From Ophelia neglecta (lineage: Eukaryota): a stretch of 64,000 nucleotides of DNA. How positions within the stretch are numbered: position 1 is the stretch's first letter; each line of letters opens with the position of its first letter. The stretch spans positions 29,512,001 through 29,576,000 of the forward strand of contig OZ260667.1 in NCBI GenBank assembly GCA_965285935.1. The letters are read 5' to 3'. The notes under the pieces were generated by a model, which searched no databases, was not told the origin of the DNA, and saw only the letters and a program-made list of their open reading frames with translations. The position numbers and the translations under genes were made by a program. This document shows positions 590-21,200 of the stretch, one piece after another.

Positions 590-652
590 AACTCGGCACT
601 GATGCCTTGTACTTGTAGTAGATACAGGGCGGGTGAGAGGGGCTCCCGCCGC
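590..652 (-). CDS. Candidate 63-nt phase 0-0 exon for the M3-M4 intracellular loop (AAGAPLTRPVSTTSTRHQCRV)
   Basis: gtgcttctag| acceptor, |gtgagg donor, open in phase 0, locally GC-rich; no homology support because this loop is poorly conserved. Confidence 0.3.
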
Positions 653-2830
653 CTAGAAGCACGTAACTGTACCGACCGTATGCTGACCCAAAGAGAAACG
701 CGCAGGGAAGGTGTCAACTTTTCGGCCGACTCTAAACGTGGACAGGACAGAAACACTACAATGCTTGTGATAGGCATATGGTACAGTAACAAGTAAAGAA
801 CCTGCAGTAGTACCTTTCGATGTCCAAGCAATGGTACGCGCCTTGCAAAGGCAATGTATATATATAAATGAATATATTTGGTAATATATGAGCATGCCTG
901 GCATAATTATGTATAGTATAGGCAGGTCTGTTAATCTTGTTCCTGTGAAAGAGAGGTCTCGGTGCGCTTATCGACTTAATGCACAGTGGTAAGCCATGTC
1001 ACCGAAATTAATACGCTCACAAAGGGCCGTATATAGAGTGGAATTGACCTTAACATCGTATTTCGGTTGTTATTGTTCATTAAATACACGCGTTGTGTGA
1101 ATGAGCGTTCTTAAGTTTGACCGGATGAATGACATACATTTCTTGTTGGTTCCTTTAAAGCTGGCAAAATTCAACAGTTTGTTTGAACACATGAAAGAAC
1201 ACAACTTGTCCTCTTGTTTTGTGCAATGAACTGATTTGTCAATGTGATAAAACCTGTACTGACAAAATGAATGACACACTCGGAATAATTCAAAGTCTAG
1301 ATGCTAAGGTGACGTGTGCAAAAGGGTTTTTTTCTAACAAAAAAGCAAACTGTGGTGAAAAAAGAAGAAAGCTTTTAAAGACATTTTATGAAAGATAAGA
1401 CTAGGATAGTGCACCAGAAATACAAGTAGGACCAGAAGATACATGCAGTCTCAAGTTGTCAAAGTACGAAAAAAGGCGACAAGGAGATTAAGTTATGATC
1501 AGGGTGACAACATTGAGCTATTGACGTGATAGCACAAAGCAGGGTTTGTAGGCCAATCTTCATTTTGTGTTATATCAGGCGATTTTATACAGAAAATGAG
1601 AACAATAAGAGGTAAAGAGGTTAACGAGTTGAAAGTTGAGAAATGGTCATTATTCACAATAGGGTGGAGCTGAAATTGTTGATGAGGATTTTTAATAATT
1701 GAAATGTCATTGCACAAAGAAGCCAATTATTAAATATAAAATCCGGATGCATACAATTAACAAAACTCTAGGCCTTTAGACCATTCCATTCAAGCATTAG
1801 TAAGAGGTTTGATCGCGCGATAAGGGCTCACCAATTAAACATAAATATCAGACGATTTCCTCATTTCTGATCATTTTTACGAAATGTGTTTCATAATTCT
1901 TATCACTTTATAATTAACTTTCCGCATTAATCAATTTTATATATTTTTTTTTTTCAATAAATTCTTTTTGAAGTCCTAACTCAAATTCTTTTACAGTAAG
2001 TGGGTGGTCCAATAGGCCTCGGTGAAGGTTACATTCATTATCCGGCAATTGACATTTTGTGTTTTAGACGCCTATCCTTCCAGATATTTATACCGACTGG
2101 CGTTATGGTTCTTAATTCCTCCGGTTACACGGGACATGTGACCTTTCCAAAAGGCCTCTGTCATTTCGTAAAACATATGTGCAGTACTCTATGTCTACAG
2201 TGATGGCCTACTTTGTGACAACGGTAATATTGCCGTTAACGTAAAACTGATTGCAATGACTTTTAACTCTGTGTTCAAACACACTGCAAAAAACCCAACA
2301 GTGAAAAGTTTGAAACAGAAAGAATCATCATAACATGCCCAAGGATAAACTGAGATTCGAAGTGAAGCAATTGTGAGATTGATTATGACCGAACCGGTTG
2401 CTTACTGTCTCTCTCAAGGAGGAATTTTGTCGTTTCTTATGTGAAATAATATTATTGAAGAAACAATAGACCGGGACAAATTGGCACGTGTGAATGTGTC
2501 TTGGACATTCATGGTTCTCATGTGAGAGGGTTCTAGTTATTTGATGGTAAATGGGTGGAAGCGGCCATGTCAGTTTTTTTAAGGCCTTTACGTTATTCCA
2601 AACTGCCTGACAATCTGACCGCACCCCACGAAATCTCTGTCGACCGAACCCAAAGCACCCCCTCCCTGACCGCGCATACTGATAGTCGGAAATGGATAAT
2701 ATGTAGACGATGATGTTCTTTCTGTTTCATAGCTTTTCCGGTGGTTTCTTTCTTGAATTCCTTAGTGGCTATGACGCATTGTGCGGGGTGTGCTTGGTGG
2801 CCTCTGCGCCGACTTCACTCTGGGGTATAC

Positions 2831-3219
2831 CTGTTCGAGCGCCCAGCCGCCGGGCTCGGGTATATGTAGCCGCCTCCGGGCAGGGTTATCCACTCGAATA
2901 CTGCGCCTGGATATAACATTGACGATAGCGAACTCGAGCAGCCCAACAAAGACAAAGAAGAGGCAGACGATCATCCAGACGTCGATGGCCTTGATGTAGG
3001 ACACCCTTGGGAGGGCCTTGTTGGCCCCAGAGGTCTGGGTTGTCATTGTCAGCACAGTGAGTAAGCCAATCGACACCCGCGCGGGAATTGCGTCTATGTT
3101 CAGCCAAAACGATACCCATGATAGGATGACGATCAGAATGCTAGGGATGTACACTTGGATAAGGAAGAAACCGATGGAGCGCTCCAGTACGAAACGGATC
3201 TCCTGGCAGGGAAATGCTC
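2831..3219 (-). CDS. Alternative exon 7D: loop C end + M1-M3 + loop start
   Basis: tctccaccacacag|GA GCA ... CTC GAA CAG|gtatac, 389 nt, phase 1-0; M2 = [23 protein letters not shown]. Confidence 0.92.
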
Positions 3220-6200
3220 CTGTGTGGTGGAGAGAATAGACATTAAAGCACATGGGCACGCTTAATTTTATTATTTTGTTTACGGCTCTGAGGGTTCGAT
3301 TGTGTGGACACATATCCAAGGTTTCTTGTAATCTATTCCAGACGTCGGCTGCAGCTGAGCAAAGAGTAAATGGTGCACATCAGTAAAGCAAGACACCTAG
3401 ATCTACATGTTCGGGTTGACCATTCTGACAAGGACCACAAATGGAAAAGCTAGAATTAATCAGAATGAACTGAACATATACTTATATTGGGACTGTCCTA
3501 TATTCTTCCACAGTGTCATGATCCTTTGTTCGACAAAATGAGTAAGTTTCAGCAATCCTCCTCTTGTCTTTCTGCTCGCCGACTGTTTATACAAGCGCTG
3601 ACAGGGTATAAACGGCTTCCTTTTTTCTACTGATGGCTCTGCAGGAAATTCAATGAACTAATAGTCGGCTATTACATGGATGGCCTGCTGTAGCGTTCGT
3701 TTCGCGAAGTCTATGAGCTCGATGAGATTCGGCGAGCCTAGATAAGCGTCGTGTGAAATGTCAAGAGTTTGGTGAATGATAATGGAGGAGTCACTTTTAA
3801 TTATGACATGGACATATCAGCGGCGGCGGTGTGAAGCATCTTTACTCAACACTATAAACAATAAGTCGGCAAGGCATATATTTAACACACGGCTTACAAG
3901 CTAATTGAAGATTAAGCATCGAATTACTTGAGGTAACATGGTATCTCTAAAGCACTGCAAAAGCAGAAACAATATGACAATGGAAATAACGTTTAACAGT
4001 CAAAAAGCCACAGTACAGACGCAGGGTCCAACCGACGGGTAACTAAAAAAAAATACAAATTCCTTTATTGACTATCTTAGATGTCTTTAAGTTGATTGAC
4101 TACGTCAAATAAATGCATCTCACATTTGATAAATCTTCCCCTATAACGTCAGAAGGAACATTTACCGGAGTGGAGCTTGGTCGTAAAGACTTGGCATTTT
4201 AACAGATGGCAGAAAAAGCAGAAGCAAATAGAGAAAGAGACAAGGTTAGCAAGGTTGTATCGGGGAAATATATTTATGCAAACCATTATTCGTATGTGTC
4301 TACTGAAGTGTGTTTTGTGGGATTTCTGAATTCTTTAGCATAATTCAAATTGAAATTATGAGTTTCCTGAAAAACATACACGGCGACTGCTATTTTGGTG
4401 TCAACAAATGGCGACTGACGCTTCATCGTCGATTTAATGTGCAAAGTCACCTGATATGTAAATGGTGCAAGAGAAAAGAAATTCTCCATTAGCTACCTGC
4501 TCCATCTGGAGGTGGCCGTCCATGTCCAGCTTCTGCACGGGCGGGGTCGGACGGCGTACCGTGCTCCCCGTGCGCACGCCTTTCCGAGATATCACATTGA
4601 CCAGGGCGAACTCGAGCAGCGAGGCAAAGACGAAAGACAGGCAGACAGACATCCACACGTCGATCGCCTTGATATAGGAGACTCGGGGCAGGGAGGCGTT
4701 CGCCCCCGAGATCTGGGTAGTTGTGGTCAAGACTGTCAACAGACCCAGTGTGACACGCGCCGGTATAGCATCTATGTTTAACCAGAACGAGACCCAGGAC
4801 AGTATCACTATAAGAACACTTGGTACATACACTTGGATGAGGAAATATCCAATTGAGCGCTGTAGGACGAAACGTATCTCCAGACACGGGAATGCGCCTG
4901 TATGGAAAGAGGTAATGGTTTTATCATACTACTTCGGTTAAGACTTACCCCACTGGCTACTACTTCCTGGTGACTGAATGCCAACACGAAAAAATGTCTG
5001 TTTCGGTGCCGAGAGATAACGGTGATAGCGACATGGCTGAATGCATAGAGTTGTCTTTCCATACGGATGTTTTTGGGGGTATAGCCCTTAACTTTTTATA
5101 TCTTTGTGCCACTTATTGATAAAGGCATAACGTGTCGGTGGTCGGATCGTCTTTTCGCCGCGCCAAGGGGGTCGAGACACAATATTGCAGTACATATTAA
5201 GAGCATGCAACAAATGGGATAATTTCACACGTTTTTCTGAAAACAAACGCTTCACTACAAATCAAATAATTACTTTTCACAACATTCACACTTTGTGCAT
5301 GAAACTTATATGTGGGTAATACTGAGGGAACATGGAGAGATGTTGCACAACATTTGCGGACCAACTGCTCAATACAAGAGTTCAAGATGTGATCGACCAG
5401 ATGATCTGCTTCAAGATTCAGTTATCTTTTTATTTATTTTGTATGTGAATTCTTCGTGGATGTATTAATTAGTCATGGGAACAAGGCCAACCTGCACCAA
5501 CTTTGTACTAATGAACGAAAATTCTAGGGACTGAAATAGAAAAAGGTCGACGTTGTTTATATAGGTCTATATATATAAATATATATGTATATATATAAAT
5601 ATATATATATATGTATAATTCTAAATATTCGGGTCAAAGAGGAAAAGAGTAAGCGATAGAAGAGTGCATAAATGCATTTCCCCAGCAATGAAGCGGTAGC
5701 AGAAGCGAGATACAGCATTAAGTAAAGATGTTACGGGTGTGACGACTCTCTCCATTGAAGGGACATGCCCAATCGGCGATATCTAGAATTACCAATGAAC
5801 TAGTGAATTGAACAAATACTTGAGAATGATCATAGAAATTTTGACCGGGTGGCGATAATGCCAAATTACTGGGCCTTACTAAGGTGTAGAGAGAGAGTGC
5901 ATGTACTGATATAATAAAAATACAATTGGGTATAGCCTACAACTGGACGAGTATGTACCACTGGGTGCAGTGCATCACACTTACACCAAGTGCACACCGT
6001 ATGTTATGTGGAAGTGACGTAATACCTGCTCCATCTGCGCGTGGCCTTCTGCATCCAGCTTCTGTACTGGCGGCGGTGGGCGGCGCACTGGATTTACGGT
6101 GCGCACGCCCTTCCTCGATATCACATTGACGACAGCAAATTCGAGGAGGCTTACGAATACGAATACTAGGCAGACAGACATCCACACGTCGATGGCCTTG

Positions 6201-9200
6201 ATATAGGAGACTCGGGGCAGGGAGGAGTTGGCACCGGAAATCTGGGTGGTTGTGGTAAGAACGGTGAGTAGCCCCAGTGTGACCCGCGCCGGGATTGCGT
6301 CTATGTTTAACCAGAAAGACACCCAAGACAGGATGACGATCAGAATCGAGGGAACATAGATCTGAATCAGGAAGAATCCAATTTCGCGCCTCAGCACAAA
6401 GCGTATATCCAGGCAGGGGAAGGCTCCTGTTGAGGGGAGATATGGCAGAAGTGAGAAAGTAAGGATACGTATCAAACAAAAGGCACCATGCTCGGCAAAC
6501 CAGGGAATGCTGCTGGCATCTTTGTCGTCGTTGTCGTCACGTCATCAACTTGGCTATACATAGGATGGCGCCTCTGAGTTCCGAGTGGAATGACATGTTG
6601 ATGGGAGAGAGGCGGATTCCTATATTATAATATTCAAAATGTGATTAGCAAACGAGCATGCGTTGTCCCCAGACGCCCTTACCGCTCCGTGCGCATGACC
6701 AAAGTTCCAGGCGCAGTCTCGTAACGCGTTTCGCTAGCACGTGATCGTACGAGTCTGGTGTGAGACGTGCATATTACTATGAATGAGTGCAGCAAGGCGG
6801 ATGGTAGATGGATGCGCCAAACAATGAAGAACCACCGTATAATTGAAGGCGCGCTCACCATCGACAATAATGATGACACAAATGTAAAGGTTACTACGTG
6901 ACTACTTAGTGAATGGTGATCTCTATGTTAGATGGCACCAGCAACATATCGCTAGAGAGACCTGGCACCATAATAAGATTCCTATGAAACTAGGCCTACG
7001 TGATGTCTAAAGGAATATGTGCCGAAGCCAGAAGACAAGAACTCGAAAAATGAGGATAATGTGTTGAGGAAAGTCAAACTAAACTATGACATGAACCGAC
7101 GCCACACGAACGAAGACTTGACAGATAAATGGGTCATGTATTGAATGAGTTATCACTCCTTTACTCCAAGAAACCATGGAAAAGATGGACAAGAATAAGC
7201 ATTGGGTTTGGCAGATGCGATATATGCATTAAAGATTTAGAAGCTTAGCAAACAGGCGATAATAGTTTCGAATGGCCATAATTTAGAAGAAGCGTAGTGT
7301 GAGTAGAAGCGTTATAATATTGCACATATGAACATTTGTACACCTTGTGAGGAGATGTTAAAAAAACGTCCAAAAGCGTTCATCTACTGTAACACAAGTA
7401 AAGACATTTTTATTCGCAAACAAACGATTTACTCCTTAATGTTAATGTATTGTTGGCAAAAGACATTTCTCCGGAAATGGCTGCGGGGAGGGGAGGGAGG
7501 GGGATGAATTATTTATTGTTTAAGATGTAGAATAAGCTGTGTACATTTTGTCAGCGAACATAAAACATGTTGTAACACAGGTACAAAAAGCCACAAACCT
7601 TTAAGCTCAGCTACGATTAAACAGGTACTATACACTTTTGGTAATTACAACATACAACATGTAAAAGACGTAACAATTAATGACAGGGAGGGCAAGCCAA
7701 ATACTGGGAATGGGAAGGGTTTAGGGGTAAACATTTACGATGGTGGAGGTGAGCCCGACTTACACATAGCTGAACATACAATTCAAATAACCGCCAATAG
7801 TTTAGTCTGTCACCGATGTTAATGGGTAGACATAAAATGTTTAACGAGTAAGCAAAGACATAGGCATAAGCTGGGAAATGTGACAGATCTAAAGAAATAG
7901 CATGGCGGGTATACTGAAAGTAGGTAACAGCAATAGTAACAGGGCAGTGGGACATGGGAAACAAGGTAGAGGACGCGCATAGCATCAGTGCTAAGGGGAT
8001 GAGTCAAATATTTGTTCGGAAGCAGCGGAGTTACACAAAACTTTTTGTAAGCCAGAATACTCAAACGCACCCCATTTCCAGAACTGTGGTACTCAACAGG
8101 TTAAATTTGAAACCGATGTCAACACGGTTAATCAGTCAAACTAGCAGACTTGGTAGTGATTAGTGATTACTAGGAGCCACGACAAAAGTAGCACCAGCTG
8201 TATGTGCACTTATCAGACATGCGCAGAACATAGCCATACCTTATTAGGTAAAAAGGGTGCACGTCAATCTGGCCCAATATTGGTCAGTTGGGAGACAGTA
8301 TATTTTGTGGTGTATGAAATACCTGCTCCATTAGATTTCCTCGTCTGGCAAGTAGTTTTCGTTTTTGGTTTCTCCGTTTCAATGGGTTTATTGGACGGAT
8401 CCCCTTTCTTGATATCACATTCACTAAGGCGAACTCCACGAGGGCGGCAAAGACGAAGATGAGACACATAGATATCCAGACATCTATGGCTTTAATGTAA
8501 GACACTCGAGGCATGGATGCGTTTGCGTTAGCGCTCTGTGTGGTCATGGTAAGTACCGTGAGGAGCCCGAGCGACACGCGGGCAGGAATTGCGTCTATAT
8601 TCAGCCAGAACGACACCCATGATAGGATGACGATCAAAATGGTAGGGATGTAGATTTGGATCAGATAGTAGCCGACGCTTCGGTGGAATTTAAAGTCGAT
8701 CTTTAAGCAGGAAAAGGATCCTGTCGATGGCAAAAGAAAAGTTTAAAAGGAGTGCTTGAACCGTCCATCCGGTACGTATGTATTCTGTCAGTGTAGCACG
8801 CGCCGAAAACTGCTATCACAGTTTCCCTACCAACAGTAAGTATACCAAACTAAATAGTATCACGATAGAAAGCTTTTGGATTGGCACATTATTATAATAG
8901 TCTCTGACGAACTACTTTCTGTTGCCCCCAGTATTGGAATGAATCATAGTTAATAGAAATACCAAGGTTGTTGACAGAAGACAAAATACCAATGGACGGC
9001 TTAATGTGTCTGTAAAATAGTTAGGAACAAAAATAGGGAAGTTTGCCATTTTTACATGCTATTGCCGTATCAAATGATTTCTACAGAGATAACACTGCCA
9101 TGCATGTACTGTAAACATGTATATGAATGTGTCGTACGACTTCATGCGCAAGGAGAGATGTAAAACGGATCGCTCACAAGAAAGCATTAAGCTATTTTAA

Positions 9201-12200
9201 TCCAGCATTCCAACGAAAAAAAACCTAATAGTTTTAGAAACAGAAGCAAATTCTGTCAATTCAGAATCTATATGTCGCGATAAAATGGCAAAGCTCCCTA
9301 AAATTGTTCAATACAAGATTTCTTTGCGTAAACGAGAAGGTTCGTCTGTAATGACAAAAAAGACGAAATTGATCGTCGACCAAGAAGTGGTTGATATCGT
9401 TACCAAATTCGCGTAGATATATTTTTTTGAAAAATATAATATCGCGTCAGAGCTCCCCACCCCCGACCCTACCCCCAGGCTAAACTATGTTGTTCCGAAC
9501 TCACTTCCAATCGACGATGTCTGTAAAGGGGTCACTATGCATAAAAGTCAGCAAGTTAATTAAGTATTAGCCAAAACATAATATGAAATCGAGGCACAAT
9601 TCTCGTGCACATATACCAAAATTCAAGGCGTCGGTGCCATCGAAAACGTGATCAGTATAACAAGCGTGTGAGCATAACGTTACACAAAAATATCTAGACA
9701 GGAATAATAGTATTGATATCAGAAGGCGATATAAATCATCGGCAAAGGAGAGCAACCTGAAGCGGAAATAACACCGGGCGGTTGAAGCACAGTATGGAAC
9801 CGTCTCATTAGATCATTGGAAATGCGACATTAATGAAACGAGGAAATAACAAATGTTAAGACTAAATTAGGATTTCAACGATATGTCAATTTGGTCTATT
9901 GATTTACGAAAGTTTATCGATAAAATCATTATAAAATCAGTGAAGTGATCGTCCATATTAGGTGATATTGTGAAAGATATATAATAGGAAGCTGTCGTGC
10001 AGACGTCATGTTACTTGGCTTTTATCAAGGAGAAGAAACACATGTCCAACCTGCAGTATAGTTTTGTGAGCAGTCGTAGAGAATTTTGTCCTGCAAACTA
10101 AACTGTGGCAACTGTAGTTCCGCATCGATTTGTACGGGATCTTCCAACCACGCAAAATACATTGTGTCCATGGTATAACCGACTGCAAGATACAATACAG
10201 CAAATATGGAGCTAGTTGCAAATATGCAGCATTGAGCCTAGCTATAACTAGCTAGTGACTGTAGACTGGCCAAGCCAGTGGTTTTATGAGGCAGACCAAT
10301 CTTAGTAGATTTTATCCGGACAAAATGGTCCAGTAAGAATGGTGTCGGACTTATATGGTTCCAGACATAAGGGTCCCAGGCGGGAAGGCGGAGATAAAGG
10401 TCGCATTAGTATAAAACATTTATTCAAATATTTAAACAAAATTTCAATGCACCCCTAATGTGCTCATTTTGTACTTGCAACATTTTATATTTTCTGACGG
10501 GACTATTATGTCCGGGACAGTTATGCCCGGGACTATCTTGTCTGTGACCATTTTGTCCCGGACTCCCCCATACCATATCCAGTAGAGATCTTTGTTGGGA
10601 CTAATTTTGAGTCCATTTACATCACGCGAATCATAAAAACTAACGTTATATTCATGCTGATATGTGTCTTTTGATTAGCAATAATTTCTGTTTAATATAT
10701 ATTAGCGTAGGTAATTATAAACGATAGTATCATATAGAGGAAAACTCTTGAACACGTCTGGATTATCTCTAGGCCAGAGGAGTCGTATGAGAGTTGAATA
10801 AAATGACACCTTAGATAAAAAAGTAAATAATTACTTACAGCTTTCAAACATCATTGGACATGTTTGGGTGTCCAACGGATATTTCTGTAACATCATAGGG
10901 CAAGATAAAGTGGCTGAAATTCTGGAAAAGGATAGGGATGCATAGTTTGTACCCATCTTATACAGTCAGTGATATATCTGTAATTTTTTATCATGCGAAA
11001 TAATAATTATTGTTCAAATTTTCTTTTATTTCACAACCAATTAAAAAAAATCATTTTGTTTGCAGAAAAAAGCACAAACATGCAGGCGATAGATACTTTT
11101 ACACAAGTGAGGTAAGAACATACGTCAAATCAAAGTTAATATTGGTTCAATGTGGCCTAATAAACTCATTCATAAACAATTACATTAGAATTTGGTAACT
11201 TTCCCTATGCCCTAGAGCAAATCCTTCAGCAATATAGCCCAATCGAAAACCTCCAAGGAATGGCAATTAATCGATTTGATAACCCTTGGTACAGTTTTCT
11301 TTTATATATTCGATTAAAGTGTGTAAATTCTTGATGTATACATGGAGCTAGTGAGGGAGGCATCATGCAGTCACAGTCCTAATCACGAGGAAGTGTGTAC
11401 TCCTAGTGATATATGCTTATTTGTTTTAATGATTCAATATGAAGGCGGCTCAGCCAGGGCCCAGAACTCGTGGTCTTGCGGCGATAAGCAATGTGTTTAT
11501 CGCGGCCAAGACTATGTCCTAATTAATTGTTAATTATAACAATGGGGTATACATTTTTTTCAACAATAATACCATGAACATTACTTTTTCCATAGTTCCT
11601 AATTCACTAGTTATTGCATTTAGGTTAGTTAAGGTCATTCCTTATTTCAAACAAGCAGTATAACAAGCTTCTTTAAATCACATTGGGGGAGCAGATGAAG
11701 GGAGCAGGTGAGGCATTAATTCATACTTACTTTGTCACATACCAAAGATGACCAGAGGAATTTAATCGTAAGAGCCTATTATCAACTGTTACGTCATGGA
11801 AGCTGGCTCTCTTTTCGTTCCGAAAGAAAGTATCCGGAATCCATATTTTTTCCCAGCCGTCATCACCGAGCCGAACTTGTTTAGTCTTTCCTTGCGTAAA
11901 GTTGAATTGGAGACGAGGGTCTCTCCATGCTTGACGCAAATACATGCTGACTGAGTAGTCCTGTTAGTAAAAAGCACATCAACTCAAATTCATGCGTATT
12001 AGTTGGTAAGATTGTGTGCTGGGTTAAACACTTACTTCGTGACGTACCAAACTCTGCCTGTAGAATCGAGAGACATTAATCTGTTTGCTACAGTGATATC
12101 ATGAAAGGCCGCCCGTTTTTCATTACGAAAAAACGTGTCTGGTATCCACAGTCTATTCCATATCCCATCTCCTAACTTGAGCTTTTTTCCTAAGTTCGGT

Positions 12201-15200
12201 TGCGGTTCAAAAACCAAACGTGGATCATACCACTCTTGACGCAAATAAAAACTAACGGAATATTCCTAAAAGAGAAACAGTTGAGAAGAAATAAATGAAT
12301 AAAAGATAACTGTCCGGCCACCAAAGATCGAGTCAGTTTTCTAATATCCGCCCTTCAACTGGAATGAATCTAAACACATTTCTCTATTGCAGCGCCAAAG
12401 AAGTCGAAACAAGATGTGTTTGCGCATGCACTCCATCTGGCGTATTTTTCCATTTGTATACGTTTTACCCTCGTCAAGACAACACAAATTGCGTTAAAGC
12501 TATACCTTCATCACAGGCACGTGAGAAGGCTCCATGCGTTCGGGTAAAGGTATTTTAATAGTTTATGTTTGCATTCATTCATTATTTTTCATTCAATATG
12601 GTAAAGTAAATTAATCACGTACCATGGTCTGTTCACTGATGGAGTAAAAACTGTTGACGTATATACCAAGGCGTACTTCAGTGGGAGAGTCTGGAAGAGT
12701 AACGGAGAGAAACACCATATAAAACTAGTAAACGGTAGAAACCGCTCCTCGTCAGCATGCGAGTGAGCATGCGCCCGGGCTAAGTTACTTATAAGGCAAT
12801 GCTTAAAGTTATGTGTCTCTATTAAATTGATTTTAAAAAGGCAATGATATATAAAGAAAAAGTTCATCGGGCCAATTAATGACAGTCTGAATAACTGGCC
12901 TTAAGAACTTGCTATTTTATAACTTAATACGATGGAAAAAATAGTAGCTCAAAACTATCATAGTCTAAATATGACGGTATTTATAGATAACATATCTCGT
13001 TAAATATTGCAATTTCTAATCTAGATGTTTGAAAACCATGCTGTTTTTTCTCAACGCTAGGATGAGAAAACTAGTTGCAATACATATTAAGTCTAAGTGG
13101 CTTATTTTTTTAAAGAAAGTTTGTGCACGTTTTTATACAAAAGTGCGGTGGCCAAGGCATACGGCGCTCTACAAGAGGAACTTATTTGAGAGAGAAAGGT
13201 AAAGAAGAGAGCACAGGAGGCAAGCAGGTGGGCAGAGCAAGCTTAGCTACAACAATCACGATATGAGCACAGGAACTATACCAAAAACAAACAGGTATCC
13301 AATGTGTAGATTCGGTAATAAACATGCCAGATTACCATGTTTCCCAACAATAATTATTAAAAACATCCTGTCTTTTTTACAATAATATAAAAATAATATA
13401 ATCCATTAAACTATTCTTAGATTTTCATCATTTACATACTACTAATGGATAAAAGTTCAGCTTCAACTTCAAACTCCCATCATTTATTGAAGGAAACACT
13501 ACTGAGATTTGAAATAAAATTATAATTCAAACAATAAAACTTATAGCTCCAGTTAGTTAGTTTTGATATCAGAGAGCACAGTTAGTTGTTATGCCTTAGG
13601 TGCCTACAAACGCAACTGGTGAAATAGTGAAGAAAGTTAACCAAATGGTGTAAAGTGCAAAGATGCCTAGCAGCAGTGGTGATGTTGTTCAGGCATTAAG
13701 TCAGGCACGGCAAATTTAGTCATATTAAACAGCTTCAAGCTTGAAGTTTGCAAACTTGAAGTGAAGATGAACATGCGTGTTAGAAAAACGTAAAACCATG
13801 CGTCCGTGCACAGATATATGTACCTAACATAGGTGGGTCCTGCTTCGTGTACGAAGACAGTAGCCGGCGAACCAAAATATCTTGCCTGGCGAATAGAATT
13901 GTAACACGAACATTGTCCAAGAGTGTATCATATTTAACTAAATAAAACAAGGATAAAATAATATATCGTACAACTCATCAGCACCCACAGAAGGCCAGGC
14001 TAACGTGGAACAATGGCCCGGGAAATTGTCATGAGACAGACGGCTAGCACGAGATACTGGCTACGGTACATTCTTTTGTCAATTTTGCGCACAACACATC
14101 AAGAAATCAGTAACAATAACAGCAAATGTCATAGTATGATGTTAAAATACGATCAAAGTGTATATATGAAAGAAAGGGGCAAAAAATGACGGCACATTAA
14201 TAGAATCTATGAAGAGTGATTTCCCTGCAATGCTGTAGTTCCACGTAGCCTAATTTCTGCAACAGTTGGCACGATTAACAGGAAAGATGACGGACGTAAA
14301 GTAAAGTCAGTCATTGCAAACTGAATCCAGAGAGTACGAATCCGACATGCCGCACAAAGTGGACGCCTCCTAGAGCGAAATTCAGAAAGGAGAAAGAAAA
14401 GAGAAAGAGAGAACTGATAGCTCACGATGCTCTGGTATGGATTAACCGTTGCTCATGGGTTTGAATGCTGGACCCACGGGCACTGAAACCGAAACTGCCC
14501 ATCAATACTGTGCTACTTGACGAAGAGCTAACATAAAACTACAAGTGCGCATGTCGCATGCCTAGGCAGCAGTAACGCTCATCCTAGCAGGTTATTGGAG
14601 GAAACTTTTTGTAATGTCATTTTTATGTGTTGATATTTGGAATTAAAAACTTGCCAGTTCTAAGTTATTGATAAAGTTTGGAATTGTACATAGTGCCCTG
14701 GTAAATAGTCCCAGCTCATCCCAGAAGCGCACACGCTCAGGCAGATATGTGACTACAAATCAAGTTCGCCAGATTCAGACATTGCAAAAAGTTCCATCGC
14801 CGCGCAACCGACCAGTTTGATCAAAGGTCACGTGACTACACCACCTGATCCTCCCATTGTTTACCTTTCGATGGAGGTTCCTGTCGGTTGTAGCCCGTTA
14901 ATAAACGCGCAAGCACGCTCGTTCTTCTATAGAAGAGATGTCAAAAATGACAAAATTAGTGCTCTACACTATGGGGGTGCGTGGTTCTTTTAACTATTCA
15001 GAATAATAATCATCCTTTTAAAGGGAATTTAGCAATACTGAATACACGATAGGAAGGACACAGTTAGTTAAGTCCGGTAGGACTAGCACATTAAGAAGTT
15101 CAGGTTCCCCACAGATGATTAGAATGAATCAATACTAACTGCCATACACCCCCTTGTATGTACCATGCAACTAGAACAACCAACGTTTAACAGTTAAGTG

Positions 15201-18200
15201 TGCATAACGTGAAGGTTGATTCGCAGTCGATCGTAAAAAAGTGCACATGTATATTCAAGCAATTATGTCACAAGGTGGTGGTCCTGTTTCTGTTGGACCT
15301 ACGAAGAACTTTGTGTGCAAGAATTTATCAAGAATTATACACTGCGTTCAAACCACCTGGTGGCATGGGATTTGTCATATACCTACTAGGTTACACCAGT
15401 TTTGAAATTTTGACTCAAATACTGATGTTTACAATTCGAGAATTAACCAATAGATAGGTGAGGTATTGGGCTTGAAATTTTGCGTTGCAGGTATATGATT
15501 GTAATTATAACAAATTTCAATAATATCGAACGAAAGTGAATGGCACATATAATTCAAAAGAATAGTTACCAATCAACGTATGTACAAACACTACATATTT
15601 ATATTATATTATTATGATGGTCATAATTGTAAACATTGCAAAAGAAATCAACTACATTATACGTAGTATCCATTTAATATTGTTGATAATTATTAAATGC
15701 TCCATACTCCGCACTGAGTGAGTTATCATTAATGGCAATATAGGCATATAAAAAGAGAAGAGTAATAAATATTAATGTAAATCTTGACATCATTTCTAAT
15801 ATCAAGGTACGTTTAATTAAATAATATAGACATATATGTGTGCATATCTTTATTTATATATTATGCACAATAATAAGGTATTATTTATATAGATGGTCGG
15901 TTAGCATTAAGTGCATATCAAACTTTACATTTTTTATTGTAATAGAATTTTCAAATATACCTTAAACCGAAATCAATGTTGTCTCTATTACAACAGCTTA
16001 TGAACAGTTCAAAGCAATGACTTCACAAAGTAACAGATAAACCTAGACTATTTTTTAGAAGGGGATAAAACACTGAACCAAATGTGAACAAAAACACGGT
16101 CAGATTTAACATAATTTCAACCATAACATTAGACATATACACGAGTATGAAAAACTTATTAACAGGACAGTGTGAACAATGTGGAGACAGTTGGGGTTGT
16201 AAACATAAAAACGCCCAGAACGACTAATCCAGACTGCGCGTTGAAATGGATAAAGCTCGAGATGACTTTTACCATTTTTGTGCTATTCTGTGACCCAGTC
16301 TGGAGTGATCGAAGTGGGCTCTACTAAGTGCACGTTGTAACTACTGGGTCACCATGGTGGCTATTCTTGCTGCTAAGGCCTTTGCTGTGGATCGCGAATG
16401 AAGGTAAACAAATCTATAGCCTATAAAATACTTTGATCTGCCTGGATAATCTATCTTTAAGACGACTGGTTTTATACATCATGCTCTTTCATAAAGCTAA
16501 TTCAGTTGCCTTTATCGTGCTAAGAACCCTGACCGTTTGAATTACACATGATTGCCAATAATAAGGAATTACCATATATAGTGCTATGACATAGGATCAA
16601 TATACTTAACGGAGAAAATGCTTCTGAATGCGACTAACGAGAAGGAAGCAGAAGAACCATGCGTTGGTATTGTCCAAACAAATTATTAAAAAGCAATAAA
16701 GCTACTGTAAGATCATTCGAAACCAATTTTTCTCTCCATAAAATGGGCTGGGATTTTTAGGTTTCGAAGCTAATTAATGTATTTCAAATCAACCATGAGG
16801 GATTGAGAGGAAACAAACAAAGTTATTTAATATTTTGGAAGTTGCATTTTCATAAAGCGACGATTTAGTATTGGTCTTTGGGGTGTTTATTTATTGTGAT
16901 TTCTAACAACAAACAGAAGTGAGAAAAAATCAATTTAGATAAATGTGTGTGAGGTCAAACGAAATAGCAGGCTCTACGTTCTATTTTAGTGCCGAGATCT
17001 CGCGAGATATGGTCGTGCTGCTCACCTTATTTCTTTATCCTTTTTCTCGCTGAAGGAATTACAAGACGACACCTTAACCAGCATTGCTCAAGTTTTCAAA
17101 TTTATCATGTCAACTTTGATCTACAATAATTGCGAGTGAAAGACGACTACGCTTGCGCCACGACTAACACATTGCTCGACGCAGCTGTTCGTTTTCGGAC
17201 CCAGCGTCTTGGCCAGCCCATTTTACTGCCGTTCTATCTAAAACATATTACGCAATCAGTAAAAGAGAAAATGGGCTTTCACTCTGAACAAGTCAGATCT
17301 GATTGAAGAGCAGGATGCTCATAACCAGCGGCAGAATGCTTTCAGTCCCCTGGCAATTGCACAGTGTATTTGCAAAAGCGTGAAGCGTCAAAATAAAATT
17401 GGTGGCAGCGATTTGTCAGTCATTTACCATATTTATTGAAGTTGCCGACAGCCTTAATGCCTGTGAGCCCCGGAGGCGGAGGGTATATCAGAATAAAGCC
17501 TTTTTATCTCACACTGATATTTGCCACATTTTGATTGAATAAACGTGTCGCCTTAAACAAACTGTACACTTTTCTATTCAGAACGTAACACGATGCGTAG
17601 TTTTTTCACGGGCGTGTTAATATAGTGGAGTTTCGATTATTAACCATTTGGCCCGAGCTCGATAGCATACCACTTGAGGCTGGAATGAGCTTGTGTTAAT
17701 ATCTGATGCTTGTCCGATGCCCTGAGGTCAATGTGGGGAGAGGATGCCCATCAATTGACACCTCCTGCCTTGAGATCATACCCACCAATGACTGTCTGCA
17801 ATGTAGTTTAGTGATTTCATTATCATGCGAACATCGATTTTGTGTTCTAGGCGAGCGAATCGGGCTTTGATCCGATCCCTCGTTGACACGAATGATTAAT
17901 CTGAAATCAATGAAATACTTAATCGTCGGTTCATAAATCCATAATACTTACTATAAGCAGTTCGCTGAAAACTCAAACTCACGGTACGTTAAGCCAGCAA
18001 AAGGTCAGGAATGGGATAGCGAAGGCAATATGGCGTATTACCGGGCGTCCCTACCATACAGCTGAGGCGTACACATTAAAATTGCTGATCTGACCGAGCC
18101 TTCCGACAACTCGTTGGTCTTCGTATGCCATACATGTAGGCCCTCACCCTCTTATGCTAGGGCCATTAACTTGAAGGGACTCGGAAGCATTAGTCAAAAA

Positions 18201-21200
18201 ACGAGTCCGCGTTATAAATTATGTCAGGCATGTTTTTGCTACCCTATTGGCGATCACGCCACCTCATTTTCGAATATGTTTCGAGAGATGGCACAGGAGA
18301 AGACAATACAGGACGAGGCGGGGTGGGGAAGGATGTACGACACTTACAGGGTAGATAACCAGGGTGAGGCTCTGTCTGTCAGAGCTGGTAAAGACACCTG
18401 ATATATCACCGTGTCTGCTGTAGAGCAACGCAATAAAATTAATGTAAGACAAGGTTGGAACAACTGAAAGGGATTGAAAAGACGCATGTCGGGAACATCA
18501 AGCAGCATAAATTCTTAACATGAGTTTACACTATAGTAACGAAGCCACTGATCTCACTCTAGACAAGTATCTAATAGGAGTGCGAATTAGAATATTCATA
18601 TAATATGGGATTTAAGCCATTTTATACTCTACGTTTGTCTTCAAGCAATAGTCGGAATGATCCGTTATTTTCATGACGCTAAATTCCTTAAGCGATTGTT
18701 GAAATGCGCGGGAGACAAGCTATATTTGTGTCACCTGTAGGCTATAGCTTTCGGCGCAGGCATATCATACTGCGAACTATACAAATCTTATTTATTCATC
18801 TTACCCTATGTCTTGATTATTATAATCCTACAAATAATCAGAATATGAAACAAGTCGAATATCAACAAGCATATTAATGCGCCATTTCCTTCGTCTCAAA
18901 TTGGAATGCAATGATATGAGTTCAGCTGACAATTTGCTATCAATCCTTAGCAGTCGAAAACTCTTGAATGGAAACAAATGGATGTTCTATTCTACAGTAG
19001 CTATATTGACCTAAGCATGAACACTATCATAAGGACTTGTATTAGTTGTAATGCCTAAACCTGTGACCCATAGTGTATCAACATTTATTTGTAATACATA
19101 AATCTATACTGAGAGTAACATAATATCAAGAACAAATAATGATATGATAAAGCATCGGCGTGATAACCTTACGACATACATTAGAATCGGAAAACGTGCG
19201 AAACTGAACAAGATGAAATCGAGGCTGTACATGCGTCACGAGACGACGCTACACCAATGAAAAGTAGTGCAAATTGTCGGCTAACTCATGATCTCTGGGA
19301 ACTATTAACAAGAAATGGAAAAACAAAATCAACACGTGGCTTGGTGAACATCAGGCAGTCTCGTGTGTAGCCAAGCTTTTCTAGTCTGTATAGGTGTTTA
19401 CCAAATCATACACGACACGATCTTCCACATATAACCATGCGACCAGTTCTTTCTAGGTTTCCAATTTTGACAGTACATGTATTACCCTTTTATTTTCGCG
19501 ACATGCTGCGACTAATCCGAGACTGCCTGGTAAATCCACACCGTAGCAGTAATCATATACACCTCAACATTGCAACTGGACATTATAAAAAAACAAGAGT
19601 TAACTAGTTTACAAAGAGGTATTTCACTTACGAATCCGGGTCTTCGTGGCCCTTTTTTGCTTTCATACTTAAACGCCTTTTTTGTGCGCTGGACAAATTA
19701 ACAGTACAAATTAATGTTTAGAGTTATGCGGGAACATACTGAGGAAAACATTGTCGGTTTTTTTTCTTCCATTGGTTAAGGAAATGGTACACTTTTCACA
19801 AAACATTGTTTTAATTATACACGCATAGGACTGTTACACATTTTTAAATGCTGAAAAAACATATGGTGTGTGTGTTTATAAGGTCTACTACTCTTGAATT
19901 AAAGGCTATTCGCAATACACAGGGTTATAGATTGTGAGGGACGTAATAAAGGATAACACACATAATTTCTGTTGAGAGTAGTAATCCTGCCGTCGAGGAG
20001 CACTTGGCATTGCCAGGAAGCGGTATCTAAGAGGCAAACGTTGCGCTCTACAGGTCTAAATTACCAGTTAAAACCAACGAGACATATCACGGATTGCTTT
20101 ATATTTTTATTATGCAGGGTATAATCACAGTAGTATGTCGTTTGCATTTTTTCAAGTGCATGCTGTAGGGCGAGCTCATCTCAGAACAACAAAAGGCACC
20201 ATGTCATTCCGGAAGGCGCATCAATTTGCAGACGGTAGTGTTCCGATAAACATGTCAATGTTGGGAGTGCTTTTTTGACAGGGATTAGCTCTGTATTACA
20301 GGAAGTCAAAATGACAGATCTGTCTACACGAGACGCACGCTTTATTATCTAACCGTTTACCATGTCCGATAGCACCCATGGATGTAGTTATTTTGTCGTT
20401 TTCAATCATCACGAGGGATAGTAATGAGACCACATTACCCACCATGTCAATCTCTCTTTGGCCTACCTAGCGCCAAGCTTGTTTTTGTCATAACAATAAA
20501 TCGCAAGTTTTAAAAGCAAATCATGGCCATGTCCAATTCATTTCATTTTTTATTGATTGGTATCATTATATTAATGGACGCCAGTCTGGGCTGTAGCTGT
20601 GTCTGCTGGCCGCCCTTAAAAAGACAAGATTACATAAAAACTGTTTTAGGCCTATATAGTCATATTATGTCAACAGAAGAAAGAATCAAAATAATTGAAA
20701 ATTCTTCAACTAATTGCACTTGCACGGATTTTTCTGTAGATTATTTTGAATGGAGTGGTAATTCTGTAAAATTTGAATTGACTCGAGATAAGCCTATAGT
20801 CATATGATCATAGACCAGCGGAGGATAGGGTTTTAAGAAATTTCAAAACTCAGACCAACCATGGAAGACTACGTCATTCGAGTCAGGCTGATTACACGCT
20901 TGAACAAGCAGAAGAATGACCCGTTGGTGATCCGAATATTTAGGCCAATTATTGACTAGTTTGATGATCCTAAAAATATAACGACGGCCTATCAACGATT
21001 TGGTTGTGGAGACTGGCATTCTCGGCTTTGGGAGTCGAGTATATGGCGGCGCCATAGTGATGTGACAGAGATATAAGATGGAGAATGGACGACACGCGAG
21101 GGACTGGGGGAAAGGAATTCCATCGAACCAAATAGTACAAAACTTGGAAGACGGATTTTATGTTCTGTACATTTATAACTGCGAGACTATCCTCTGAACA

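What the first reader, a model, noticed from the sequence alone, without database searches (positions are those of the whole stretch)
2831..19688. Combinatorial single-gene receptor system: binding face x pore (at least 8 subunits; up to 32 with N-terminal cassettes)
Seen: a 2-way cluster and a 4-way cluster separated by two constitutive exons, plus two frame-preserving N-terminal small exons. Inference: a miniature Dscam-like logic in a neurotransmitter receptor, with ligand recognition and gating/permeation modules chosen independently. Because the channel is pentameric, co-expressed isoforms could form many heteromers, for example alpha-like and beta-like subunits from one gene.
Basis: inference. 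Interest (0 to 1): 0.85.

Follow-up and report, generated by a model that had tools for sequence, protein, structure and literature searches.

The report
Annelid chloride-channel gene with swappable exons
One glycine/glutamate-receptor-like chloride channel gene of a probable annelid carries four sets of tandem duplicated exons and could encode 32 to 64 subunit variants, a design already known from insect and nematode receptor genes and unproven here because this species has no RNA data.

Summary
The two exon clusters are real. On the minus strand lies one Cys-loop anion-channel gene. It has two copies of a 230-nt ligand-binding exon (E4a/E4b). It has four copies of a 389-401-nt exon for M1-M2-M3 plus the first part of the intracellular loop (E7a-d). 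E5 and E6 lie between the clusters.

One is a 62-nt N-terminal helix exon (E2a/E2b), which is not frame-preserving. The other is a pair of M4 terminal exons (E8a/E8b) just outside the window. Exon 1 lies far upstream, at 40.6 kb.

All copies keep their splice sites and phase. Any double inclusion gives a premature stop. All 64 one-per-cluster combinations stay open. The E7 copies are old (dS saturated) and under purifying selection (dN/dS 0.07-0.13). Capitella and Ridgeia orthologues carry E4x2, E7x2 and E8x2.

No RNA run exists for this species, so use, exclusivity and independence of the choices are inferred.

The logic is not new. Insect nAChR alpha6 (exon 3 x exon 8), Rdl, and nematode unc-49 and avr-14 work the same way.

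Other notes of this scan (s1-743181, s1-743202, s1-743258) describe these same stretches.

Verdict: a new, unusually modular member of a known kind.

The parts
40538..40635 (-). Probable exon 1, coding part. ATG at 40635, signal peptide [14 protein letters not shown]..., donor AACAGG|gtaagt, ends with 2 nt of a codon.
   Evidence: There is a weak but collinear match to the 5' end of the related-species cDNA L005 ([17 protein letters not shown] against DVMVSGGRRNERKRTG, plus a 12-nt exact word). The phase fits both E1b and E2. Inferred, with no RNA support.
19632..19688 (-). E1b: 57-nt frame-preserving small exon in a Lys/Arg/Asp-rich N-terminal stretch. Possibly a cassette exon.
   Evidence: Acceptor ttgtccag|, donor |gtaagt. 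Homologous to MKSKGDKQDKADS of cDNA L005, where it is joined to E2b. Open frames exist with and without it.
14865..14926 (-). E2a: 62-nt exon for the N-terminal alpha1 helix ([19 protein letters not shown]).
   Evidence: Good acceptor and donor. 57% identical to the same stretch of an annelid transcript (P0170, E 7e-4). Same length and phases as E2b.
13824..13885 (-). E2b: 62-nt alternative of E2a ([20 protein letters not shown]).
   Evidence: 93.5% nucleotide identity to cDNA L005 nt 132-193, with the breaks at both exon ends; the helix motif occurs only at E2a and E2b on the 64-kb minus strand.
12623..12690 (-). E3: single-copy exon covering beta1 and the beta1-beta2 loop ([22 protein letters not shown]).
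12036..12265 (-). E4a: 230-nt ligand-binding exon covering loop D, the beta2-beta3 loop, loop A and the first strands of loop E. It has no N-x-S/T sequon.
   Evidence: It groups with the first E4 copy of Capitella with moderate support (81/85).
11731..11960 (-). E4b: 230-nt alternative of E4a, only 75 nt downstream of it. It carries two N-glycosylation sequons (NFT, NSS).
   Evidence: (this is the copy that matches cDNA L005).
10839..10921 (-). E5: single-copy Cys-loop exon ([15 protein letters not shown]).
   Evidence: This exon is duplicated in Capitella and alternative in Lineus and Owenia isoforms.
10051..10182 (-). E6: single-copy exon covering loop B, loop F and the first half of loop C. 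Its donor is weak (CAG|gttgga).
   Evidence: The donor lies at the same position in Capitella and Ridgeia.
8323..8720 (-). E7a: 398-nt exon covering pre-M1, M1, M2, the M2-M3 loop, M3 and the first part of the intracellular loop. It is the most divergent copy and has a strongly basic loop start ([13 protein letters not shown]).
6026..6426 (-). E7b: 401-nt copy. M2 has 2' Thr, 11' Thr and 15' Ile. The loop start is proline-rich ([11 protein letters not shown]).
4497..4897 (-). E7c: 401-nt copy, sister of E7b (87% protein identity, dS 1.27, dN/dS 0.085).
2831..3219 (-). E7d: 389-nt copy. It has 20' Lys, a bulky Ile at the M3 position that is Gly or Ala in ivermectin-sensitive receptors, and an RRS motif after M3.
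   Evidence: It groups with the E7 of the related-species cDNA (93/92).

Best explanation
A single gene of about 43 kb lies on the minus strand. Its coding part runs from window 40635 to about 2.4 kb beyond the window start. It encodes a pentameric (Cys-loop) ligand-gated chloride channel subunit of the glycine-receptor / lophotrochozoan GluCl (GluClAc2-like) group.

Four of its coding exons exist as tandem duplicates:
- E2 x2: the N-terminal helix.
- E4 x2: loops D, A and E, with glycosylation sites in one copy.
- E7 x4: pre-M1, M1-M3 and the proximal intracellular loop.
- E8 x2: the distal loop, M4 and the C-terminus.

Each mRNA most likely takes one copy per cluster. This would give up to 32 subunits, or 64 if the 57-nt exon E1b is optional.

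Exclusivity is enforced at least by the reading frame. E2, E4 and E7 are all 2 mod 3, so two copies or none give a premature stop and presumably nonsense-mediated decay. For E4 the 75-nt spacer between the two copies may add steric exclusion. E8a carries its own stop, followed directly by a 5' splice site. It probably acts as a stop-carrying penultimate exon whose skipping exposes E8b.

The variants should tune assembly and the complementary face (E4), gating, conductance and modulator sites, clustering or phosphorylation (E7), and M4 packing (E8). They should not change the class of agonist.

Shown: the gene structure, intact splice sites, frame logic, purifying selection and conservation in other annelids.
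Inferred: actual use of every copy, exclusivity in vivo, independence between clusters, the agonist, and all functional effects.
For: Family assignment:
- Pfam Neur_chan_LBD and Neur_chan_memb on every copy.
- The best solved relatives are GlyR alpha2/alpha3, at about 70% identity over M1-M3.
- PAR motif, Cys-loop and a second Cys pair are present.

Exon boundaries:
- AG/GT sites are intact and the phase is identical within each cluster.
- The related-species cDNA L005 breaks exactly at E2b, E3, E4b, E5, E6 and E7.

Frame logic:
- 64 of 64 one-per-cluster combinations give one ORF of 416-443 aa.
- All five double inclusions tested give a premature stop.

Selection:
- dN/dS is 0.07-0.13 between E7 copies where dS is measurable.
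- dS is 1.3 or more, or saturated, for the E4, E7 and E8 pairs tested.
- The copies are therefore old and kept as coding sequence.

Conservation:
- The Capitella teleta orthologue (L004) has E4x2, E5x2, E7x2 and E8x2. Ridgeia piscesae (L006) has E4x2, E7x2 and E8x2.
- The splice positions match for the E4 and E7 copies, E5 and the E6 donor.
- W_E4a groups with Capitella E4 copy 1, and W_E4b falls with Capitella copy 2 and other annelid transcripts.

Annotated isoforms of homologous genes show the same kinds of alternatives:
- Lineus: E5x2, E6x3 and N-terminal cassettes.
- Tubulanus: alternative E6 and an alternative M4 exon.
- Lingula: alternative E2.
- Owenia: alternative E5.

Not an assembly artefact: the copies are 56-77% identical in DNA, and three DNA runs hold 94-97% of the words of the stretch.
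Against: - No RNA run of this species is available, so no copy is shown to be spliced into mRNA here.
- The only transcript, from a related species, shows a single path: E2b-E3-E4b-E5-E6 and an E7d-like exon.
- The trees of the exon copies are short and weakly resolved. Ridgeia's two E4 copies group together.
- E7a is a long branch, and E2a has no transcript support.
- No docking/selector pairing stands above shuffled controls, so the splice-choice mechanism beyond frame and NMD is unknown.
- The isoforms cited from other species are database models. I could not inspect their RNA support.
Confidence: 0.75

Rival explanations
1. The clusters are real alternative exons, but the choices are coupled or cell-type specific. 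Only a handful of the 32-64 possible subunits is then made, for example one larval and one adult form, or one neuronal and one muscle form. There would be no Dscam-like combinatorial use.
For: The single related-species transcript shows one path only. Most annelid transcripts in the databases carry the E4b type. In insects some Rdl and alpha6 combinations are much rarer than others (own knowledge; exon 8c of Tribolium alpha6 needed nested PCR, PMC2064938).
Against: In Tribolium alpha6 all six combinations were found (PMC2064938). The Lineus models combine E5 and E6 alternatives freely, in 5 of 6 possible pairs, but these are predicted models. Nothing in the sequence couples the clusters.
Confidence: 0.45
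2. One or more copies (candidates: E7a and E2a) are no longer used. They would be silent pseudo-exons that merely still look intact.
For: E7a sits on a long branch of 0.86. E2a has no transcript match. A possible decayed fifth E7 copy at 626-845 would show that copies can die in this cluster.
Against: E7a has an intact acceptor, donor and frame. Its dN is 0.25-0.28 against a saturated dS (dN/dS 0.13 against E7d). All hallmark residues are kept, including PAR, the M2 9' Leu and the M2-M3 loop [10 protein letters not shown]. E2a is closer to the orthologues' helix than E2b is. The supposed relic has no DNA-level support.
Confidence: 0.15
3. The repeated exons are an assembly artefact, such as collapsed or expanded haplotypes, or a very recent segmental duplication without function.
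For: An Elysia chlorotica homologue does show a 100% identical duplicated exon block that looks like such an artefact.
Against: Here the copies are only 56-77% identical in DNA, with saturated dS. The introns between them are unrelated. The same architecture occurs in Capitella and Ridgeia. Independent read sets hold 94-97% of the stretch.
Confidence: 0.02

Closest known systems
Insect nicotinic receptor alpha6 gene (Dalpha6 / Tcas-alpha6): mutually exclusive exons 3a/3b and 8a/8b/8c
   Same: It is one Cys-loop gene with a duplicated ligand-binding-domain exon and a duplicated exon that changes the pore helix TM2. The alternatives arose by tandem exon duplication and are used in combination. 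All six combinations were detected in Tribolium (PMC2064938). The exon sets are also described in PMC6393475.
   Different: That gene is a cation channel of another subfamily and phylum. It has two clusters, not four. Here the pore-side module is four-way and spans pre-M1 to the proximal intracellular loop, and M4 has its own two-way choice. The insect gene also uses RNA editing.
Insect Rdl (GABA receptor), exons 3a/3b x 6a/6b(/6c), and insect GluCl exon 3a/b/c
   Same: These are anion-selective Cys-loop genes whose ligand-binding-domain exons come in mutually exclusive pairs or triplets, separated by constitutive exons. Exons 3 and 6 of Rdl have two constitutive exons between them, as E4 and E7 do here (PMC2064938; exon connectivity measured in bioRxiv 10.1101/019752).
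   Different: In Rdl both clusters lie in the extracellular domain, and no transmembrane exon is duplicated in insects. In passing I saw three tandem M1-M3 exons in an Ixodes Rdl-like locus.
Nematode unc-49 (GABA receptor) and avr-14 (GluCl)
   Same: One gene gives several subunits that share an N-terminal ligand-binding part and differ in the channel part. UNC-49B and UNC-49C co-assemble into a heteromer, so 'heteromers from one gene' has a proven precedent (PMC6920096, PMC3144221). Predicted proteins of these genes came up as multi-stretch hits of E7.
   Different: There, whole blocks of 3' exons, each with its own M1-M4 and 3' end, are swapped. Here a single exon (M1-M3) is swapped inside the gene, M4 is chosen separately, and the extracellular domain also has alternatives.
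Aplysia GluClAc2-type (lophotrochozoan) glutamate-gated chloride channels
   Same: They belong to the same branch of GlyR-like anion channels. Both E4 copies carry the beta2 Tyr-x-Arg and the loop A Arg (FFRNEK) that bind glutamate's alpha-carboxyl in the GluClAc2 model (PMC4178172). That paper lists Capitella and Helobdella orthologues.
   Different: Identity to GluClAc2 is about 50% in E4 and 66-71% in E7. Loop B has Phe where GluClAc2 has Tyr. The Ser at alignment position 121 is Val here. Loop C is two residues shorter, as in GlyR. The paper's main text does not contain the words splice, exon or isoform.
Database isoforms of homologous genes in Lineus longissimus, Tubulanus polymorphus, Lingula anatina and Owenia fusiformis
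   Same: The gene family is the same, and the alternatives affect single homologous exons: E5 and E6 in Lineus, E6 and the M4 exon in Tubulanus, E2 in Lingula, E5 in Owenia, plus small N-terminal cassettes.
   Different: Different exons are duplicated in different lineages. None of these sets shows a four-way M1-M3 cluster. They are annotation models, and I found no paper that describes them.

Membership tests
Cys-loop (pentameric) ligand-gated anion channel, GlyR/GluCl branch | Neur_chan_LBD and Neur_chan_memb domains | tested here: met
   LBD hits on E4a, E4b and E5 (E 3e-12, 1.5e-15, 4e-7). Membrane-domain hits on all four E7 copies (about 1e-33).
Cys-loop (pentameric) ligand-gated anion channel, GlyR/GluCl branch | Cys-x13-Cys loop, and a second Cys pair in loop C | tested here: met
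   E5 reads [16 protein letters not shown]6 and E7 together give DCSQNYTAG(A/S)F(P/S)C.
Cys-loop (pentameric) ligand-gated anion channel, GlyR/GluCl branch | Pro-Ala-Arg at the inner end of M2 (anion selectivity), and four membrane helices | tested here: met
   AIPARV is invariant in all four E7 copies. M4 lies in E8a and E8b. The closest solved chains are GlyR alpha2/alpha3, E 4e-48.
GluClAc2-type glutamate-gated chloride channel (Blarre et al. 2014) | Tyr96 and Arg98 in beta2 and Arg135 in loop A | tested here: met
   YLRQ and FFRNEK are present in both E4a and E4b and align to P0310 residues 96, 98 and 135 (PMC4178172).
GluClAc2-type glutamate-gated chloride channel (Blarre et al. 2014) | Loop B Ser-Tyr, and the Ser at alignment position 121 that binds the gamma-carboxyl | tested here: not met
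   Loop B is ESFGYT (Phe, as in GlyR). Position 121 is Val in WYVTK. The agonist is therefore left open: glutamate, glycine, beta-alanine, taurine or GABA.
Cluster of mutually exclusive exons arisen by tandem exon duplication | Adjacent homologous exons of the same or nearly the same length and the same phase, with intact splice sites | tested here: met
   E2 62/62 nt, E4 230/230 nt, E7 398/401/401/389 nt. All are 2 mod 3, and all have AG|...|GT.
Cluster of mutually exclusive exons arisen by tandem exon duplication | Joint inclusion or joint skipping destroys the reading frame | tested here: met
   Five double inclusions all give a premature stop. 64 of 64 single choices stay open.
Cluster of mutually exclusive exons arisen by tandem exon duplication | Each copy is kept under purifying selection or conserved in other species | tested here: met
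   dN/dS is 0.07-0.13 with dS saturated. The duplicates are present, with the same splice positions for the E4 and E7 copies, in Capitella and Ridgeia.
Cluster of mutually exclusive exons arisen by tandem exon duplication | Transcripts contain exactly one copy, and different transcripts contain different copies | not testable with these tools
   No RNA run exists for this species. One related-species cDNA carries one copy per cluster.
Dscam-type control by competing docking/selector RNA pairing | One intronic docking site complementary to a selector next to each variable exon | tested here: inconclusive
   The best 3-of-4 duplex energies (-24 to -28.5 kcal/mol) are near the extremes of shuffled windows: inside them for a dock in intron 6, up to about 5 kcal/mol beyond them for a dock in the last intron. 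The inverted-repeat scan found only AT-rich low-complexity pairs and local hairpins.
unc-49 / avr-14 type (alternative 3' blocks) | Each alternative is a complete block holding M1-M4 and its own 3' end | tested here: not met
   The four E7 copies end in a donor site with no stop codon and hold M1-M3 only. M4 is encoded once per E8 copy downstream of the whole cluster.

The most novel reading that the evidence does not exclude
This would be the most modular Cys-loop receptor gene yet seen. Four independently chosen exon clusters cover every structural module: the N-terminal helix, the agonist-site loops, M1-M3 with the proximal loop, and M4. One annelid gene would then supply dozens of subunits that co-assemble into heteromeric chloride channels, doing the job of the multi-gene GlyR/GABA-A families of vertebrates. 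The architecture would be old within annelids and would have been rebuilt repeatedly in other lophotrochozoans by duplicating different exons of the same gene.
Probability: 0.3. Interest if true: 0.6.

Novelty: new member of a known kind. Interest (0 to 1): 0.42.

Why it matters
Alternative use of duplicated exons is a known way for invertebrates to obtain receptor diversity from few genes. It has been documented for insects and nematodes, where it affects insecticide and anthelmintic sensitivity.

This locus, its Capitella and Ridgeia orthologues, and the database isoforms in nemerteans, a brachiopod and Owenia point the same way. The GlyR-like/GluCl family of lophotrochozoans appears to use the same trick very widely, duplicating a different exon in each lineage. 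I found no paper describing this.

The gene offers a natural set of chimeras with the same extracellular domain and four different M1-M3 modules, two M4s, and so on. These could be used to study gating, conductance and macrocyclic-lactone or picrotoxin sites. They also allow a direct test of whether heteromers form from a single gene outside nematodes.

This is incremental rather than surprising.

Tried and rejected
1. RNA evidence. The look-up of sequencing runs found only three DNA runs of one study and no RNA run.

2. Proteins of this species. Three searches with annelid full-length homologues returned no protein encoded by the window. The closest is a JGI contig of a related species, P0159/L005.

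3. Capitella transcripts that would show both alternatives. None were found.

4. Docking/selector RNA pairing. The inverted-repeat scan and the RNAduplex scan in four geometries against shuffled controls gave nothing clearly above background.

5. A decayed fifth E7 copy at 626-845. Two collinear weak protein matches (E 0.1-0.45) were seen, but nhmmer with a DNA profile of eight E7 copies found nothing. It is left as a weak lead.

6. Paralvinella locus L007. It is a more distant paralogue with an identical internal repeat, so it was not used.

7. Elysia locus L008. The duplicated block is 100% identical, probably an artefact, so it was not used.

8. Hirudo 'GABA receptor 2/3/5/6/7' as possible isoforms of one gene. 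Rejected, because they are only 45-63% identical throughout.

9. Owenia protein P0197. It has no record in the contig index.

10. E2 copies in Capitella and Ridgeia. The motif scan of the available upstream flanks found none. The flanks may be too short.

11. Spliced models. They were assembled only inside a script, to count open frames.

Full report
WHAT IS THERE

The finding lies in one gene on the minus strand. The window is G000:C12:29512001-29576000, in an assembly of 762 Mb.

ORF listing and Pfam show four tandem stretches that each hold the first 88-90 positions of the Neur_chan_memb model, with E about 1e-33. Two tandem stretches hold positions 51-118 of Neur_chan_LBD. The four membrane copies are 62-70% identical to the first one, with long invariant runs ([33 protein letters not shown]). 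The two LBD copies are 60-62% identical. The closest solved structures are glycine receptors alpha2/alpha3 (E 4e-48, about 70% identity over M1-M3), then C. elegans GluCl and GABA-A beta.

GENE MODEL

I placed the exon ends using splice consensus, phase, and a cDNA contig of a related species. That contig is JGI record L005, encoding P0159, which is 82% identical to the window's exons. It aligns in blocks that end exactly at the predicted borders of E2b, E3, E4b, E5, E6 and E7.

The model, in window coordinates on the minus strand:

| Exon | Position | Length / note |
|---|---|---|
| E1 (coding part) | 40538-40635 | ATG at 40635, signal peptide |
| E1b | 19632-19688 | 57 nt |
| E2a | 14865-14926 | 62 nt |
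| E2b | 13824-13885 | 62 nt |
| E3 | 12623-12690 | single copy |
| E4a | 12036-12265 | 230 nt |
| E4b | 11731-11960 | 230 nt, 75 nt after E4a |
| E5 | 10839-10921 | single copy |
| E6 | 10051-10182 | single copy |
| E7a | 8323-8720 | 398 nt |
| E7b | 6026-6426 | 401 nt |
| E7c | 4497-4897 | 401 nt |
| E7d | 2831-3219 | 389 nt |
| E8a | L002:7984-8172 | beyond the window start |
| E8b | L002:7583-7783 | beyond the window start |

Each E8 copy encodes the distal loop, M4 and its own stop codon.

The N-terminal part is not quite as described. Only the 57-nt exon is frame-preserving. The two 62-nt exons are homologues of each other (...[14 protein letters not shown]... and ...[15 protein letters not shown]...). 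The helix motif occurs nowhere else on the 64-kb minus strand. They form a third exclusive pair.

IS IT MORE THAN DUPLICATED DEBRIS?

1. Every copy has an AG acceptor with a pyrimidine tract, a GT donor, and the same phase as its sisters.

2. E2, E4 and E7 are all 2 mod 3. In a script, all 64 ways of taking one copy per cluster, with or without E1b, gave a single ORF of 416-443 aa. Each of five double inclusions ran into a stop. The joined models were used only for this frame count and were not sent to any search or fold tool.

3. The copies are old and constrained. Between E7 copies dN is 0.11-0.28, while dS is 1.3, about 2.2-2.7, or saturated. Where dS is measurable, dN/dS is 0.07-0.13. For E4a/E4b and E8a/E8b dS is also saturated.

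4. The architecture is shared. The Capitella teleta orthologue (L004, 74% identity) has two E4, two E5, one E6, two E7 and two E8 copies. Ridgeia piscesae (L006) has two E4, two E7 and two E8 copies. The splice positions are the same for the E4 and E7 copies, E5 and the E6 donor. In a short ML tree W_E4a groups with Capitella's first copy (81/85). W_E4b falls with Capitella's second copy and with transcripts of other annelids.

For E7, E7b and E7c are sisters. E7d groups with the E7 of the related-species cDNA (93/92). The downstream 'NIEA(T/S)PARV' type of Capitella and Ridgeia has no clear intact counterpart here. These trees rest on 77-133 columns and are weak.

5. The repeats are not an assembly artefact. 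The copies are 56-77% identical in DNA, and three read sets hold 94-97% of the stretch.

WHAT THE ALTERNATIVES CHANGE

This section reads the sequence directly; the functional consequences are inferred.

E4 encodes beta2 (loop D), the beta2-beta3 loop, loop A and the first strands of loop E. The residues that Blarre et al. assign to glutamate binding in Aplysia GluClAc2 are Tyr96 and Arg98 in beta2 and Arg135 in FFRNEK. They are identical in E4a and E4b (PMC4178172). The differences lie in three places:
- the beta2-beta3 loop;
- loop E ([18 protein letters not shown] against [18 protein letters not shown]);
- two N-x-S/T sequons (NFT, NSS), present only in E4b.

The E4 choice should therefore tune the complementary face, glycosylation and perhaps assembly. 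It should not swap ligand class.

The E7 copies differ at several M2 and M2-M3 positions, numbered from the Arg of PAR as 0':
- 2': Ser in E7a and E7d, Thr in E7b and E7c.
- 11': Met or Thr.
- 15': Ser, Ile, Ile, Thr.
- 16'-17': AN or SG.
- 20': Ala, Ser, Ala, Lys.

They also differ at the M3 position that is Gly/Ala in ivermectin-sensitive receptors (Ser, Ser, Ser, Ile). The role of that position is from my own knowledge of the GluCl/GlyR literature.

The largest differences lie elsewhere. They are in pre-M1 ([15 protein letters not shown] against [15 protein letters not shown]) and in the first 25-30 residues of the intracellular loop. That loop start is basic in E7a, proline-rich in E7b and E7c, and carries RRS in E7d. 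'Pore module' is thus too narrow a label.

The agonist is open. The gene has the GluClAc2 arginines, but a GlyR-like loop B (ESFGYT), a short GlyR-like loop C, and Val where GluCl and GlyR have the loop E Ser.

HOW EXCLUSIVITY COULD WORK

Frame incompatibility followed by nonsense-mediated decay follows directly from the exon lengths. The 75-nt spacer between E4a and E4b may in addition be too short to be spliced out as an intron; this is an inference.

E8a's stop codon is followed directly by a consensus donor (TAG|gtatgt). No AATAAA or ATTAAA lies between E8a and E8b. The first such signal comes about 170 nt after the E8b stop. E8a therefore probably behaves as a stop-carrying penultimate exon.

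I looked for Dscam-type docking and selector elements. The inverted-repeat scan gave only AT-rich and local pairs. The best '3 of 4' duplex energies were close to the extremes of shuffled windows.

WHAT COULD NOT BE SHOWN

No RNA run of this species exists in the index. No protein of this species turned up in three database searches. Use of each copy, exclusivity in vivo and independence between clusters are therefore inferences.

Support from elsewhere is indirect. Database isoforms of homologous genes show alternatives of single homologous exons:
- Lineus longissimus X1-X10: two E5 and three E6 alternatives in five combinations, two small N-terminal cassettes, and a loop micro-exon.
- Tubulanus: two E6 alternatives and an alternative M4 exon.
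- Lingula: an alternative E2.
- Owenia: an alternative E5 and an N-terminal cassette.

These are annotation models, and I could not inspect their read support.

COMPARISON WITH WHAT IS KNOWN

The principle is established in several systems:
- Insect nAChR alpha6 has two alternatives of exon 3 and three of exon 8, which changes TM2. All six combinations were amplified in Tribolium (PMC2064938, PMC6393475).
- Rdl has alternative exons 3 and 6, and GluCl has alternative exon 3 (PMC2064938; bioRxiv 10.1101/019752).
- unc-49 makes three subunits with one N-terminal domain. UNC-49B and UNC-49C work together (PMC6920096).
- avr-14 makes two subunits with a common ligand-binding domain (PMC3144221).

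Gene models of the nematode genes appeared among the multi-stretch hits of E7.

What differs here:
- the phylum;
- the subfamily (GlyR-like / lophotrochozoan GluCl);
- the number of clusters (four);
- a four-way swap of M1-M3 as a single internal exon, with M4 chosen separately.

Full-text searches for mutually exclusive or duplicated exons in lophotrochozoan or annelid Cys-loop genes found no description. The Aplysia GluCl binding-site paper does not mention splicing.

VERDICT

I class it as a new, unusually modular member of a known kind, with interest 0.42.

The scan's other notes on this window (s1-743181, s1-743202, s1-743258) describe the same clusters. I checked their sequence claims and they hold.

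Noticed in passing
window 626-845 (minus strand): Two weak, collinear protein matches to E7 (GAYHCLDIERYYCR, then VSVLSTFRVGRKVDTFPARFSLGQHTVGTVT followed by a stop). They lie 2 kb downstream of E7d and could be a decayed fifth copy. A DNA profile search did not support it.
   Followed up: partly
L002:7583-8172 (1.8-2.4 kb beyond the window start; G000:C12:29509583-29510172): There are two tandem M4 terminal exons, E8a and E8b. E8a's stop codon is followed at once by a consensus 5' splice site (TAG|gtatgt). No poly(A) signal lies between the two exons.
   Followed up: partly
window 11961-12035: Only 75 nt separate the E4a donor from the E4b acceptor, and the spacer ends in TACTAACAG. Steric exclusion of E4a-E4b splicing is possible.
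   Followed up: no
window 12266-12337 (minus strand): The sequence just upstream of E4a translates in frame to ...[18 protein letters not shown] and then a stop. It resembles E3 ([16 protein letters not shown]) and may be a relic of an older E3+E4 duplication unit.
   Followed up: no
window 13824-13885 against L005:132-193: E2b is 93.5% identical in DNA to the related-species cDNA, against 73-87% for the other exons. Such extra conservation is typical of regulated alternative exons.
   Followed up: no
L009:5959-9910 (Ixodes scapularis, GCA_000208615.1 DS856995.1): A tick Rdl-like GABA receptor locus has three diverged tandem copies of the M1-M3 exon, followed by one M4 exon. The deposited gene model strings them together.
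   Followed up: partly
L004:11974-12454 (Capitella teleta KB293367.1): The Capitella orthologue also has two copies of the Cys-loop exon E5, which is single-copy in this window. The JGI gene model CAPTEDRAFT_3682 appears to include parts of both M4 exons (E8a-like and E8b-like).
   Followed up: partly
L008:14045-17417 (Elysia chlorotica RQTK01000331.1): A two-exon M1-M3 block is repeated with 100% identical protein sequence. This is probably an assembly or haplotype artefact rather than alternative exons.
   Followed up: no
window 20000-64000: No ORF of 130 aa or more lies on either strand. This part seems to be the 21-kb first intron plus upstream intergenic DNA. The highest G+C of the window (0.478) is at 40-42 kb, around the probable exon 1.
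   Followed up: partly
G000:C12:30278157-30291217: Two paralogous GlyR-like genes lie about 770 kb away on the same chromosome, each with a single M1-M3 exon. Many more lie on contig C7.
   Followed up: no
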